A stretch of 26,650 nucleotides of DNA from positions 1-26,650 of the forward strand of contig NIVC01005087.1 in assembly GCA_002269645.1 (NCBI GenBank). Reading direction: 5' to 3'. This DNA comes from Macrostomum lignano (lineage: Eukaryota). This document shows, piece after piece, positions 14,353 to 17,066 of the stretch; position 1 is the stretch's first letter; the number at the start of each line of letters is the position of its first letter. A program made the translations under genes and the position numbers. The notes below the pieces were generated by a model that was not told the origin of the DNA, made no database searches, and saw only the letters and a program-made list of their open reading frames with translations.

Positions 14353-17066
14353 TTGCCAGGACCTGCACCGGAGCGGTTACGAAAATTAGATTTCTCGGTA
14401 GTTGCTCGCACTCTTTTGCACTACTTGAGTAGTCTGATTTTCGAACGGCAGGCTGGTTCCAGCAGGTAGTTCCTCTGGATAAAAGCGCTTACCGCGCCCA
14501 TTGGCTTTCCAGCTGCCTTAATCGTTTCCGGTGATCTTGTGTGCGTGCATTCAGCTTGATTGGCTGCGGCAAGCAAGCTCGAAAGAGCTCGCTTCGCTCG
14601 CTCTTTCTCGCTATCTACCATCTATTGCCAGGACCTGCACCGGAGCGGTTACGAAAATTAGATTTCTCGGTAGTTGCTCGCACTCTTTTGCACTACTTGA
14701 GTAGTCTGATTTTCGAACGGCAGGCTGGTTCCAGCAGGTAGTTCCTCTGGATAAAAGCGCTTACCGCGCCCATTGGCTTTCCAGCTGCCTTAATCGTTTC
14801 CGGTGATCTTGTGTGCGTGCATTCAGCTTGATTGGCTGCGGCAAGCAAGCTCGAAAGAGCTCGCTTCGCTCGCTCTTTCTCGCTATCTACCATCTATTGC
14901 CAGGACCTGCACCGGAGCGGTTACGAAAATTAGATTTCTCGGTAGTTGCTCGCACTCTTTTGCACTACTTGAGTAGTCTGATTTTCGAACGGCAGGCTGG
15001 TTCCAGCAGGTAGTTCCTCTGGATAAAAGCGCTTACCGCGCCCATTGGCTTTCCAGCTGCCTTAATCGTTTCCGGTGATCTTGTGTGCGTGCATTCAGCT
15101 TGATTGGCTGCGGCAAGCAAGCTCGAAAGAGCTCGCTTCGCTCGCTCTTTCTCGCTATCTACCATCTATTGCCAGGACCTGCACCGGAGCGGTTACGAAA
15201 ATTAGATTTCTCGGTAGTTGCTCGCACTCTTTTGCACTACTTGAGTAGTCTGATTTTCGAACGGCAGGCTGGTTCCAGCAGGTAGTTCCTCTGGATAAAA
15301 GCGCTTACCGCGCCCATTGGCTTTCCAGCTGCCTTAATCGTTTCCGGTGATCTTGTGTGCGTGCATTCAGCTTGATTGGCTGCGGCAAGCAAGCTCGAAA
15401 GAGCTCGCTTCGCTCGCTCTTTCTCGCTATCTACCATCTATTGCCAGGACCTGCACCGGAGCGGTTACGAAAATTAGATTTCTCGGTAGTTGCTCGCACT
15501 CTTTTGCACTACTTGAGTAGTCTGATTTTCGAACGGCAGGCTGGTTCCAGCAGGTAGTTCCTCTGGATAAAAGCGCTTACCGCGCCCATTGGCTTTCCAG
15601 CTGCCTTAATCGTTTCCGGTGATCTTGTGTGCGTGCATTCAGCTTGATTGGCTGCGGCAAGCAAGCTCGAAAGAGCTCGCTTCGCTCGCTCTTTCTCGCT
15701 ATCTACCATCTATTGCCAGGACCTGCACCGGAGCGGTTACGAAAATTAGATTTCTCGGTAGTTGCTCGCACTCTTTTGCACTACTTGAGTAGTCTGATTT
15801 TCGAACGGCAGGCTGGTTCCAGCAGGTAGTTCCTCTGGATAAAAGCGCTTACCGCGCCCATTGGCTTTCCAGCTGCCTTAATCGTTTCCGGTGATCTTGT
15901 GTGCGTGCATTCAGCTTGATTGGCTGCGGCAAGCAAGCTCGAAAGAGCTCGCTTCGCTCGCTCTTTCTCGCTATCTACCATCTATTGCCAGGACCTGCAC
16001 CGGAGCGGTTACGAAAATTAGATTTCTCGGTAGTTGCTCGCACTCTTTTGCACTACTTGAGTAGTCTGATTTTCGAACGGCAGGCTGGTTCCAGCAGGTA
16101 GTTCCTCTGGATAAAAGCGCTTACCGCGCCCATTGGCTTTCCAGCTGCCTTAATCGTTTCCGGTGATCTTGTGTGCGTGCATTCAGCTTGATTGGCTGCG
16201 GCAAGCAAGCTCGAAAGAGCTCGCTTCGCTCGCTCTTTCTCGCTATCTACCATCTATTGCCAGGACCTGCACCGGAGCGGTTACGAAAATTAGATTTCTC
16301 GGTAGTTGCTCGCACTCTTTTGCACTACTTGAGTAGTCTGATTTTCGAACGGCAGGCTGGTTCCAGCAGGTAGTTCCTCTGGATAAAAGCGCTTACCGCG
16401 CCCATTGGCTTTCCAGCTGCCTTAATCGTTTCCGGTGATCTTGTGTGCGTGCATTCAGCTTGATTGGCTGCGGCAAGCAAGCTCGAAAGAGCTCGCTTCG
16501 CTCGCTCTTTCTCGCTATCTACCATCTATTGCCAGGACCTGCACCGGAGCGGTTACGAAAATTAGATTTCTCGGTAGTTGCTCGCACTCTTTTGCACTAC
16601 TTGAGTAGTCTGATTTTCGAACGGCAGGCTGGTTCCAGCAGGTAGTTCCTCTGGATAAAAGCGCTTACCGCGCCCATTGGCTTTCCAGCTGCCTTAATCG
16701 TTTCCGGTGATCTTGTGTGCGTGCATTCAGCTTGATTGGCTGCGGCAAGCAAGCTCGAAAGAGCTCGCTTCGCTCGCTCTTTCTCGCTATCTACCATCTA
16801 TTGCCAGGACCTGCACCGGAGCGGTTACGAAAATTAGATTTCTCGGTAGTTGCTCGCACTCTTTTGCACTACTTGAGTAGTCTGATTTTCGAACGGCAGG
16901 CTGGTTCCAGCAGGTAGTTCCTCTGGATAAAAGCGCTTACCGCGCCCATTGGCTTTCCAGCTGCCTTAATCGTTTCCGGTGATCTTGTGTGCGTGCATTC
17001 AGCTTGATTGGCTGCGGCAAGCAAGCTCGAAAGAGCTCGCTTCGCTCGCTCTTTCTCGCTATCTAC
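14353..17066. mobile_element. Head-to-tail array of 10 copies of a 272-bp non-coding element (putative microsatellite-targeted mini-element, family unknown)
   Basis: Copies start with TTGCCAGG at 14353+272k (k=0-9); the last ends at GCTATCTAC (17066). No difference seen between copies and the translated ORFs are identical. The repeat is certain; mobility is inferred. Confidence 0.6.

What the first reader, a model, noticed from the sequence alone, without database searches (positions are those of the whole stretch)
14353..17066. Ten identical copies of a 272-bp non-coding unit nested inside a giant (TATC)n tract in a homeobox intron: candidate concatemer-forming mini-element
Seen: 9 full 272-bp units plus one 266-bp unit, head-to-tail, with no visible divergence, no TIRs, no poly(A) and no credible ORF. 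The unit is complex sequence of roughly 50% GC, unlike every other repeat in the window (4-34 bp units, mostly with variants). Established: identical monomers of a few hundred nt in direct tandem are the footprint of rolling-circle or circular-template amplification (Helitron/Helentron derivatives, retrozymes copied from circular RNA, eccDNA reintegration). Inference: a very recent insertion of a concatemer of a small mobile unit whose family I cannot name.
Basis: partly seen in the sequence, partly recalled or inferred. Interest (0 to 1): 0.75.

Follow-up and report, generated by a model that had tools for sequence, protein, structure and literature searches.

The report
Young 272-bp tandem array in microsatellite
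Ten essentially identical copies of a 272-bp non-coding unit sit inside a giant (ATCT)n tract in an intron of a flatworm (Macrostomum lignano) Nkx6 homeobox gene; it looks like a very young, locally amplified tandem repeat and not a new mobile element, and a second copy of the locus lacks it.

Summary
Ten head-to-tail 272-bp units occupy 14354-17073. Nine are identical, and the tenth differs at one base where it merges into the right microsatellite. Flanks are (ATCT)406 and (CTAT)411. The host is intron 2 of an Nkx6-class homeobox gene of Macrostomum lignano.

A second copy of the locus, in assembly Mlig_3_7 and 1.2% diverged in unique intron DNA, has an uninterrupted (ATCT)243 at the same place and no trace of the unit. 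Each unit is a 258-bp core plus a 14-nt relic of this microsatellite. That relic carries a CATC variant also seen in the other copy, so the repeat unit was probably defined at this site.

Every other tandem array in the locus also differs in copy number between the two copies. The other copy's microsatellite holds a 332-bp internal duplication.

No hallmark of a Helitron/Helentron, retrozyme, MITE/SINE, transgene, mitochondrial insert or known RNA gene was found.

Best reading: a recent, microsatellite-mediated local amplification, a proto-satellite. Rolling-circle copying of a 272-bp circle stays possible, because the block is 10x272 minus 6 nt with both ends in the spacer.

The source and genome-wide copy number of the 258-bp core could not be tested: no flatworm genome was searchable. 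Interest is modest.

The parts
12730..14353 (.). Left flank: (ATCT)406, nearly pure. Its only variant (GTCT at 12738) is shared with the other copy of the locus.
14354..17073 (+). Array of ten 272-bp units. Copies 1-9 are identical; copy 10 has one C->T at unit position 266, where it merges with the right microsatellite. The block inserted relative to pure microsatellite is 14354-17067 (2714 nt = 10x272-6).
14354..14611 (+). 258-bp complex core of the first unit (TGCCAGG...CTTTCTCGC). It is non-coding, with GC 52.5% and CpG o/e 1.07. It carries two inverted CCAAT boxes (ATTGG at unit nt 147 and 206) and a GATAAAAG motif (nt 125). Its source is unknown.
14612..14625 (+). 14-nt spacer TATCTACCATCTAT, identical at all nine internal junctions. 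It equals the variant motif TATCTATCCATCTAT of the other copy's microsatellite minus one T, so it is a relic of the local microsatellite.
14380..14443 (+). Imperfect inverted repeat / 64-nt hairpin (unit nt 27-90), present in every unit. It is much more stable as + strand RNA (sense to the host gene) than as - strand RNA, because its mismatches are G.U pairs on the + strand.
17059..18701 (.). Right flank: (CTAT)411. It has a TAC irregularity at 17064-17066 and one variant (ATCG) at 17175.
9349..20889 (+). Intron 2 of the Nkx6-class homeobox gene (exons 6603-6915, 9074-9348, 20890-21270). 73% of the intron is tandem arrays.

Best explanation
This is a young, locus-specific tandem array (a proto-satellite, or large-unit VNTR) in intron 2 of an Nkx6-class homeobox gene of the flatworm Macrostomum lignano.

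A 258-bp piece of ordinary non-coding DNA of unknown source lies inside a pre-existing, very long and hypermutable (ATCT)n tract. The repeat unit of 272 bp is that core plus 14 nt of microsatellite. The first duplication therefore probably joined microsatellite on the right of the core to microsatellite on its left, at this site.

Once two 272-bp copies existed, unequal sister-chromatid or homologue exchange, or replication slippage between them, raised the number to ten. This happened so recently that no copy has acquired a substitution.

Shown: the structure, the empty site in a second copy of the locus, the microsatellite relic in the unit, the instability of all neighbouring arrays, and the absence of transposon, ribozyme or known RNA-gene hallmarks.

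Inferred: the order of events and the recombination mechanism.

No function is implied. The array mainly lengthens the intron and places 20 CCAAT motifs and 10 hairpins in the pre-mRNA.
For: 1. Empty site. L001 (GCA_002269645.1, NIVC01000845.1) is the same Nkx6 + ACE-like locus. It has identical microsatellite borders and 1.2% substitutions in unique intron DNA. It carries an uninterrupted (ATCT)243.5 and no match to the core.

2. Relic. The 14-nt spacer in all nine internal junctions equals the L001 microsatellite variant TATCTATCCATCTAT minus one T. The window's own flanks have lost the CATC variant.

3. Local regime. All of about 14 tandem arrays shared by the window and L001 differ in copy number, for example 17-mer 70 vs 21, 34-mer 68 vs 38, 29-mer 24 vs 65 and ATCT 817 vs 243. 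Arrays make up 60% of the window, against 15% genome-wide for simple and tandem repeats (PMC5730564). A 17-mer array of 70 perfect copies shows that perfect homogeneity is normal here.

4. Large-offset misalignment happens in this very microsatellite. L001 carries a compound variant pattern repeated exactly 332 bp apart.

5. Recency. There are 0 substitutions in 2580 bp of core, where about 15 are expected if the copies dated from the split with L001.

6. Nothing else inserted. The microsatellite abuts the core directly on both sides. There are no extra terminal sequences, no TIR, and no repeats between the unique flanks.

7. The core is compositionally host-like, with GC 0.525 vs 0.483 and CpG o/e 1.07 vs 0.85 for unique window DNA. 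It matches nothing in plasmids, phages, prokaryotic genomes, metagenomes, viral contigs or predicted proteins.
Against: - The internal joint cannot be produced from the present flanks by simple in-register exchange. The internal copies are preceded by ...CTAT|TGCC and the first copy by ...ATCT|TGCC, a 2-nt phase shift. The period is 272 = 0 mod 4, whereas in-register pairing of today's flanks would give 2 mod 4. An imprecise first joint, or later change at the outer borders, has to be assumed.
- Both outer ends of the array coincide with the ends of the core. This is also what insertion of a ready-made concatemer through the spacer would give.
- The polarity of the difference (insertion here or loss in L001) is not established, for lack of an outgroup.
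- The source of the 258-bp core and its copy number in the genome could not be examined.
- The two microsatellite flanks are almost the same length (1624 and 1643 bp). A random insertion point would give this with p of about 0.006. This model does not explain it.
Confidence: 0.6

Rival explanations
1. One-step concatemer from a circular template. A single core flanked by (ATCT)n popped out as a 272-bp circle by recombination between its microsatellite flanks. The circle was then copied by rolling-circle synthesis, either as free eccDNA or by break-repair synthesis running round the circle after a broken microsatellite end invaded its TATC-like patch. The multimer was fixed in the microsatellite through that patch.
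For: - The block is 10x272 - 6 nt. It equals a 10-mer opened by one cut in the spacer (TATCTAC^CATCTA^TTGCC) with 6 nt lost.
- Both array ends lie within the 14-nt spacer.
- The internal joint is out of register with the present flanks, which simple unequal crossing-over does not predict.
- All copies are identical.
- The 272-bp size and the GC/CpG-rich, promoter-like content fit what is described for microDNA-type circles (own knowledge: Shibata et al. 2012).
Against: - There is no direct evidence of a circle.
- The neighbouring arrays change copy number just as fast without any such mechanism.
- The flanks have since grown from under 1 kb to 3.3 kb and lost their variants, so small discrepancies at the outer borders may be secondary.
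- This model still needs a first, single-copy insertion of the core into a TATC tract.
Confidence: 0.2
2. A member of a small non-autonomous mobile family whose monomers concatenate. Candidates are a Helitron/Helentron (HINE) derivative, a retrozyme or ribozyme-bearing tandem repeat, or a MITE/SINE.
For: - The array is an insertion-type difference with respect to another copy of the locus.
- The monomers are identical.
- Each unit holds a strong hairpin.
- Genome-wide copy number is untested.
Against: - No TIR.
- No 5'-TC...CTRR-3' ends on either strand (direct reading).
- No unique left or right flank modules, subTIRs or 3' palindrome as in HINEs.
- No hammerhead or other ribozyme, even at E<=10 on a dimer.
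- No tRNA-like part and no poly(A).
- No other copy in 79 kb of M. lignano DNA.
- No predicted protein anywhere overlaps its translation.
- The unit contains local microsatellite.
Confidence: 0.04
3. Assembly artefact. The array, or its copy number or placement, was created by the assembler threading repeat-containing reads through a long microsatellite.
For: - The array is absent from the only other assembly copy of the locus available.
- It is embedded between two long low-complexity anchors of nearly equal length, 1624 and 1643 bp.
- No reads could be inspected.
Against: - L001 is a different haplotype or homeologue (1.2% substitutions; coding differences matched by separate UniRef models P0121 and P0122), so it is not the same molecule assembled differently.
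- The two flanks are not copies of each other. Their variants differ, GTCT at 12738 and ATCG at 17175.
- The junctions are clean and biologically sensible, with a relic spacer and a TAC irregularity shared by the internal and terminal junctions.
- The whole 6-kb structure is short enough to be spanned by single long reads.
Confidence: 0.06
4. A tandem array of a small structured-RNA gene, for example a newly amplified intronic miRNA-like hairpin cluster expressed with the Nkx6 pre-mRNA. This concerns function and is compatible with any of the amplification mechanisms above.
For: - Each unit has a 64-73-nt hairpin. As + strand (sense) RNA it folds at -28.7 kcal/mol with z = -5.9. As - strand RNA it folds at -17.0 with z = -2.9, because the arm differences are G.U pairs on the + strand.
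- The whole unit folds with z = -4.8 on the + strand.
Against: - This is a single sequence, so there is no covariation evidence.
- There is no Rfam match.
- Three or four G.U-compatible transitions have a chance probability of about 0.06-0.13.
- Imperfect inverted repeats are common in non-coding DNA.
- No expression data are available.
- The array is absent from the other copy of the locus.
Confidence: 0.05

Closest known systems
Large-unit VNTR / macrosatellite and 'satellite birth' by unequal exchange between short direct repeats flanking a unique segment
   Same: Head-to-tail non-coding units of a few hundred bp. The copy number differs between copies of the locus. The unit boundary lies in a flanking direct repeat (here the microsatellite). 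The monomers are homogeneous. The setting is a region where all tandem arrays are unstable.
   Different: The copies are completely identical. The array is nested in the middle of a 3.3-kb pure tetranucleotide tract. The first joint is 2 nt out of register with the present flanks.
Tandem-repeat-carrying Helentron non-autonomous elements (HINEs; bivalve Cg_HINE, pearl, DTC84; PMC7492417)
   Same: A short array of satellite-like monomers of 150-300 bp is associated with a tetranucleotide microsatellite. Rolling-circle replication is invoked for the origin of such arrays.
   Different: HINEs have a left flank with a subTIR, a complementary IR and a short eroded microsatellite, and a 60-bp right flank with a subTIR and a palindrome. 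They are dispersed in many copies. Here the microsatellite is host DNA that exists without the array (L001), lies on both sides, and no flank modules came in with the array.
Retrozymes / hammerhead-bearing tandem repeats of metazoans (own knowledge: Cervera and de la Pena 2020)
   Same: Tandem non-coding units of 150-400 nt with a strongly folding RNA.
   Different: There is no hammerhead or any other self-cleaving ribozyme motif on either strand, even at E<=10.
eccDNA/microDNA and rolling-circle models of satellite amplification (own knowledge: Shibata et al. 2012; Cohen and Segal 2009)
   Same: The unit length is in the 200-400-bp microDNA range and its content is GC/CpG-rich. It is flanked by direct repeats that could circularise it. 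The block equals an integral multimer minus 6 nt.
   Different: No circle has been shown, and the same structure can arise without one.
Transgene concatemers in M. lignano (PMC5730564)
   Same: This species integrates injected DNA as head-to-tail tandems.
   Different: The unit is 272 bp of non-coding DNA. It has no match to any of 72,556 plasmids and no reporter, vector or coding sequence.

Membership tests
Helitron / Helentron-derived tandem array (HINE) | 5'-TC and 3'-CTRR termini with insertion between host A and T, and a hairpin close to the 3' end | tested here: not met
   On the + strand the core ends ...CTTTCTCGC(TATCTAC), with no CTRR. On the - strand the nearest CTGG is followed by CAAG, not by host T. 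A 5' TC preceded by A is trivially supplied by the microsatellite (direct reading).
Helitron / Helentron-derived tandem array (HINE) | Unique left and right flank modules (subTIRs, IR, 3' palindrome) that travel with the array (PMC7492417) | tested here: not met
   Comparison with the empty site shows that only [core + spacer]n is extra. There are no inverted or direct 10-mers between the unique flanks.
Helitron / Helentron-derived tandem array (HINE) | Many dispersed copies in the genome | not testable with these tools
   No M. lignano genome was searchable. There are 0 hits in the 79 kb available: the rest of the window, L001 and L002.
Retrozyme / ribozyme-bearing tandem repeat | Self-cleaving ribozyme (hammerhead or other) in each unit | tested here: not met
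   Rfam 15 cmscan of the whole window at E<=1 and of a unit dimer at E<=10 gave no ribozyme family. The only hit was FTX_3, at 15.7 bits and E = 4.6.
Retrozyme / ribozyme-bearing tandem repeat | Unit-length circular RNA | not testable with these tools
   This needs RNase R RNA-seq or northern blots.
MITE / DNA transposon | Terminal inverted repeats and a target-site duplication | tested here: not met
   The best local alignment of the first 40 nt with the reverse complement of the last 40 nt is 9/12 internal matches, with no terminal match. A TSD cannot be read inside a microsatellite.
SINE / retroposed copy | tRNA/7SL/5S-derived head and an A-rich or simple-repeat tail | tested here: not met
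   ARAGORN found 0 genes. There is no Rfam hit and no poly(A) or AATAAA.
Tandem small-RNA gene array (SL RNA, 5S, snRNA, miRNA cluster) | Match to a described RNA family | tested here: not met
   No family reached even E<=10. A novel hairpin RNA cannot be excluded.
Transgene / vector concatemer | Vector, reporter or bacterial sequence in the unit | tested here: not met
   blastn against plasmids gave only 23-39-nt chance matches with E>=3. There was no phage match.
Mitochondrial insert (NUMT) of the control-region repeats | Identity to the mtDNA tandem repeat of M. lignano | tested here: not met
   The published mitochondrial repeat is a 61-bp AT-rich unit (GGGGGGAATAAATATTCCCC...) unrelated to this unit (PMC5446695). 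The rest of the mtDNA was not compared.
Locally amplified tandem repeat (VNTR / proto-satellite) | Head-to-tail units whose boundary lies in host sequence at the site | tested here: met
   The 14-nt spacer equals a variant motif of this microsatellite, as seen in L001, minus one T.
Locally amplified tandem repeat (VNTR / proto-satellite) | Copy number varies between alleles or copies of the locus, in a region of general array instability | tested here: met
   10 copies against 0 in L001. All other arrays differ too. Population variation was not tested.
eccDNA / rolling-circle concatemer | Integral multimer with arbitrary or homology-guided ends | tested here: inconclusive
   The block is 10x272-6 nt with both ends in the spacer. 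This is equally expected from in-situ amplification.
eccDNA / rolling-circle concatemer | Existence of unit-length circles | not testable with these tools
   This needs outward-facing PCR or Circle-seq on exonuclease-treated DNA.

The most novel reading that the evidence does not exclude
The array is the product of a single repair event. A broken end in the (ATCT)n tract primed DNA synthesis round and round a 272-bp microDNA-sized circle (core + microsatellite patch). This would be a natural, sequence-resolved example of circle-templated rolling-circle amplification creating a new satellite in an animal germ line. Optionally, each unit would also deliver a sense-strand hairpin RNA into the Nkx6 pre-mRNA.
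Probability: 0.18. Interest if true: 0.6.

Novelty: new member of a known kind. Interest (0 to 1): 0.3.

Why it matters
If the reading is right, this is an unusually clean snapshot of the birth of a tandem repeat. There is an empty site, a relic of the original junction inside every unit, and zero divergence among copies. It sits in a laboratory model (M. lignano) whose inbred lines could be screened for copy-number ladders or DNA circles.

That makes the old question 'unequal exchange or rolling circle?' testable at one defined locus.

It also illustrates how far the introns of a developmental regulator (Nkx6) can be filled with unstable arrays: 73% of intron 2, and an intron 5.4 kb longer than in the other copy. 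By itself it is not a new kind of element and implies no new function.

Tried and rejected
- Known RNA families. Rfam on the whole window (E<=1) and on a unit dimer (E<=10) gave nothing in the array. ARAGORN found no tRNA.
- Vector, bacterial or viral origin. blastn against plasmids and phages gave only chance matches or none. Two 22-mers from the core had 0 exact matches in metagenome, prokaryotic-genome and viral contigs.
- Coding or annotated sequence. The six-frame translation of the unit had no hit among 5.8e9 proteins. This tool can miss true relatives, as one search showed. Exact look-up of both 66-aa array ORFs found nothing on record. phmmer of the 66-aa - strand ORF against 1.84e9 representatives gave 0 hits.
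- Mitochondrial control-region repeat. It is a different 61-bp unit.
- Spliced-leader gene array. The unit lacks the ...TTGCATG 3' end typical of flatworm spliced leaders. This rests on my recollection and is a lead, not a test.
- Heat-shock or histone promoter. The unit has two ATTGG boxes and GATAAAAG, but I could not tie them to any gene. This is left as a description.
- Other copies of the core. None were found in the rest of the window, in L001 (29 kb) or in the paralogous Nkx6 locus L002 (27 kb).
- More M. lignano DNA. P0121 is not on record as a gene position.
- Literature. No paper on Macrostomum satellites or a newer assembly that would identify the unit was found.
- Assembler loop through one microsatellite node, as an explanation of the equal flanks. 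Rejected because the two flanks carry different variants and differ by 19 bp.
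Full report

Yes. Tandem Repeats Finder reports a period-272 array at 14336-17073 with 10.1 copies and 99% matches. It is bracketed by (ATCT)406 at 12730-14353 and (CTAT)411 at 17059-18701.

An exact-string check places unit starts at 14354 + 272k for k = 0-9. Copies 1-9 are identical at all 272 positions. Copy 10 differs only at position 266 (C->T), where it runs into the right-hand microsatellite. 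Measured against pure microsatellite, the extra block is 14354-17067 = 2714 nt = 10x272 - 6.

- The unit is 51.5% GC.
- It has stops in all six frames. The longest ORFs are 66 aa, and the + strand ones exist only by crossing unit junctions.
- It has no terminal inverted repeat, no internal direct repeat of 9 nt or more, and no poly(A) or AATAAA.

**2. Where is it?**

Six-frame inspection and splice-site reading give an Nkx6-class homeobox gene on the + strand. Its exons are 6603-6915, 9074-9348 and 20890-21270, encoding 322 aa. Intron 2 splits the homeodomain between ...SESQVK and VWFQNRRTKWRKK. The array lies in intron 2.

The protein is 99% identical to BOX15_Mlig002327g1 of Macrostomum lignano (P0001). 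The organism is therefore this free-living flatworm. An ACE-like (peptidase M2) gene lies on the - strand from about 22.4 kb onward.

**3. A second copy of the locus lacks the array.**

The genomic place of P0001 was fetched as L001 (GCA_002269645.1, contig NIVC01000845.1). It is collinear with the window across the Nkx6 gene and the ACE-like neighbour.

In unique intron DNA the two differ by 23 substitutions in 1903 aligned positions (1.2%) plus a few indels. The coding differences correspond to two separate UniRef models from the older ML2 assembly: P0121 is the window type and P0122 is the L001 type. They are therefore two real copies, alleles or recent homeologues. M. lignano assemblies are known to be redundant (PMC5730564).

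The microsatellite borders are the same in both, including a GTCT variant at the left edge. In L001, however, the tract is an uninterrupted (ATCT)243.5 (15676-16649). The core has no match in L001, in the rest of the window, or in the paralogous Nkx6 locus L002 (blastn, word size 7). This is a classical filled-site/empty-site pair. Without an outgroup, the polarity (gain here or loss there) is not proven.

**4. Anatomy of the unit and its junctions.**

Each unit is a 258-bp complex core (first copy 14354-14611) followed by 14 nt, TATCTACCATCTAT (14612-14625). All nine internal junctions are identical.

The L001 microsatellite contains CATC variant units in the context TATCTATCCATCTAT, at 16003, 16179-16191 and 16511-16523. 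The spacer is that motif minus one T. The window's own long flanks are pure and no longer contain CATC. The spacer is therefore best read as a relic of the old local microsatellite, preserved because it is too short to slip. The TAC irregularity is shared by the internal junctions and by the right end of the array.

Two details do not fit the simplest model:

- The first copy is preceded by ...ATCT|TGCC and the internal copies by ...CTAT|TGCC, a 2-nt phase difference.
- The period is 272 = 0 mod 4, whereas in-register pairing of today's left and right flanks would give a period of 2 mod 4.

**5. The neighbourhood.**

Tandem arrays make up 60% of the window and 73% of intron 2. Simple and tandem repeats make up 15% of the genome (PMC5730564).

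Every array shared with L001 differs in copy number:

| Array | Window | L001 |
|---|---|---|
| 34-mer | 68 | 38 |
| 29-mer | 24 | 65 |
| 22-mer | 28 | 6 |
| 32-mer | 17 | 30 |
| 17-mer | 70 | 21 |
| 25-mer | 2 | 12 |
| 13-mer | 21 | 57 |
| 23-mer | 19 | 13 |
| ATCT | 817 | 243 |

The 17-mer array (9392-10587) is 100% identical over 70 copies, so perfect homogeneity is not special to the 272-bp array. Inside the L001 microsatellite, a compound variant pattern recurs exactly 332 bp apart. This shows that misalignments of about 300 bp occur in this very tract.

**6. What the unit is not.**

- Rfam 15 gives no hit in the array at E<=1 on the window. On a unit dimer at E<=10 it gives only a meaningless FTX_3 match. 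There is thus no hammerhead or other ribozyme, no snRNA, SL RNA or 5S, and no known miRNA.
- ARAGORN finds no tRNA.
- There is no match to plasmids or phages. Two 22-mers have no exact match in metagenome, prokaryotic or viral collections.
- No protein among 5.8e9 (word-indexed) or 1.84e9 (exhaustive phmmer, longest ORF) matches its translation. Neither array ORF is recorded as a called gene anywhere.
- The mitochondrial tandem repeat of M. lignano is an unrelated 61-bp unit (PMC5446695).
- Helitron ends (5'-TC...CTRR-3') are absent on both strands.
- The flank modules that define tandem-repeat-carrying Helentron elements (PMC7492417) are absent. Comparison with the empty site shows that nothing but [core + spacer]n is extra. 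The unique flanks share no inverted or direct 10-mer.
- Composition is host-like, with GC 0.525 and CpG o/e 1.07 against 0.483 and 0.85 for unique window DNA.

**7. What the unit has.**

The unit carries two inverted CCAAT boxes (ATTGG at nt 147 and 206) and a GATAAAAG motif (nt 125). I could not link this promoter-like look to any gene.

It also has an imperfect inverted repeat forming a hairpin at nt 27-90. As + strand RNA (sense to Nkx6) the hairpin folds at -28.7 kcal/mol (z = -5.9). As - strand RNA it folds at only -17.0 (z = -2.9). The whole unit gives z = -4.8 on the + strand and -2.8 on the - strand. The asymmetry comes from three or four arm differences that are G.U pairs on the + strand. 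That is suggestive but weak, with a chance probability of about 0.06-0.13, and rests on a single sequence.

**8. Age.**

If the ten copies had existed since the split from L001, about 0.006 x 2580, or roughly 15, substitutions would be expected among them. None is seen. Under a star-like history without homogenisation, the amplification is younger than about one fifth of that split.

**9. Explanation.**

I favour a local origin, with confidence 0.6. A 258-bp piece of non-coding DNA lies in a pre-existing hypermutable (ATCT)n. A first duplication joined right-flank microsatellite to left-flank microsatellite, creating the 272-bp unit. Unequal exchange or slippage between these long perfect repeats then raised the number to ten.

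- Shown: the structure, the empty site, the relic spacer, the instability of the whole locus, the large-offset duplication in the sister microsatellite, and the absence of transposon or RNA-family hallmarks.
- Inferred: the order of events and the recombination mechanism.

The main rival (0.2) is a one-step concatemer copied from a 272-bp circle that popped out between the microsatellite flanks. It explains more economically the '10 units minus 6 nt', the location of both ends in the spacer, and the out-of-register joint. It has no direct support, and it still needs a prior single-copy insertion in a TATC tract.

The other rivals rank lower:

- A mobile-element family (0.04) fails every hallmark that could be tested, although genome-wide copy number could not be examined.
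- An assembly artefact (0.06) cannot be excluded without reads. It is disfavoured by clean, sensible junctions and by flanks that are not copies of each other.
- A functional hairpin-RNA array (0.05) is compatible with any of the amplification mechanisms and is untested.

**10. Unexplained.**

The two microsatellite flanks are nearly equal, 1624 and 1643 bp. For a random insertion point this has a post hoc probability of about 0.006. None of the models accounts for it. The source of the 258-bp core is also unknown.

**11. Verdict.**

It is best filed as a very young, locally amplified tandem repeat (proto-satellite) in an exceptionally array-rich flatworm locus, and not as a new mini-mobile element.

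It is a new member of a known kind and of modest interest (0.3). Its value is as a clean, experimentally accessible case for testing unequal exchange against circle-templated amplification.

Noticed in passing
window 9392-10587 (L001 12940-13302): A 17-bp unit (CTGACAATTAGAATAAG) is repeated 70.4 times with 100% identity, starting 44 nt after the exon-2 splice donor. The other copy of the locus has 21.4 copies at 98%.
   Followed up: partly
whole window vs L001: Every tandem array shared by the two copies of the locus differs in copy number, in both directions. Arrays make up 60% of the window and 73% of Nkx6 intron 2, against 15% genome-wide for simple and tandem repeats.
   Followed up: yes
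window 12730-14353 and 17059-18701: The two microsatellite flanks of the array are almost the same length (1624 and 1643 bp; 406 and 411 units). For a random insertion point p is about 0.006. They are not copies of each other, because their variants differ. This is unexplained.
   Followed up: partly
L001 16179-16202 and 16511-16534: The uninterrupted microsatellite of the other copy carries the compound variant pattern TATCCATCTATCCATCTATCTATTTATC twice, exactly 332 bp apart. This is a higher-order duplication inside the microsatellite.
   Followed up: yes
window 22460-25123 (- strand); L001 20697-27043: An ACE-like peptidase M2 gene (HHEMGH zinc motif) lies convergent with the 3' end of Nkx6. 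UniRef model P0122 (753 aa) fuses the Nkx6 protein to an antisense translation of this gene, which is an annotation artefact of the ML2 assembly.
   Followed up: partly
window 5597-6288: A 29/57-bp array built of TATC-like palindromic pieces gives sub-threshold miRNA hits on both strands (mir-1277, 42 bits against a gathering score of 81). These are almost certainly spurious hairpins of the repeat.
   Followed up: no
window 10565-10613 vs L001 13356-13663: A 25-bp unit (GAAACTTGGGAAAAGACTCTGCTTT-like) forms 12.4 copies in L001. The window has only about 2 copies of a related stretch next to the 17-mer array.
   Followed up: no
window 6603-21270: The two copies of the Nkx6 gene differ at a few residues (PSPSQQQSQ/TVSQL in the window and P0121; PSLSQQQPQ/TVPQL in L001, P0001 and P0122). 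Both types were already present in proteins predicted from the 2015 ML2 assembly. The NCBI model P0001 has a different, probably mis-spliced C-terminus.
   Followed up: partly
window 24056-25123 (- strand), tool behaviour: The word-indexed protein search returned nothing at E<=1e-60 for the ACE-like exon, although a near-identical 641-aa product is annotated in L001. Negative results of that tool, including on the unit, should therefore be read with caution.
   Followed up: no
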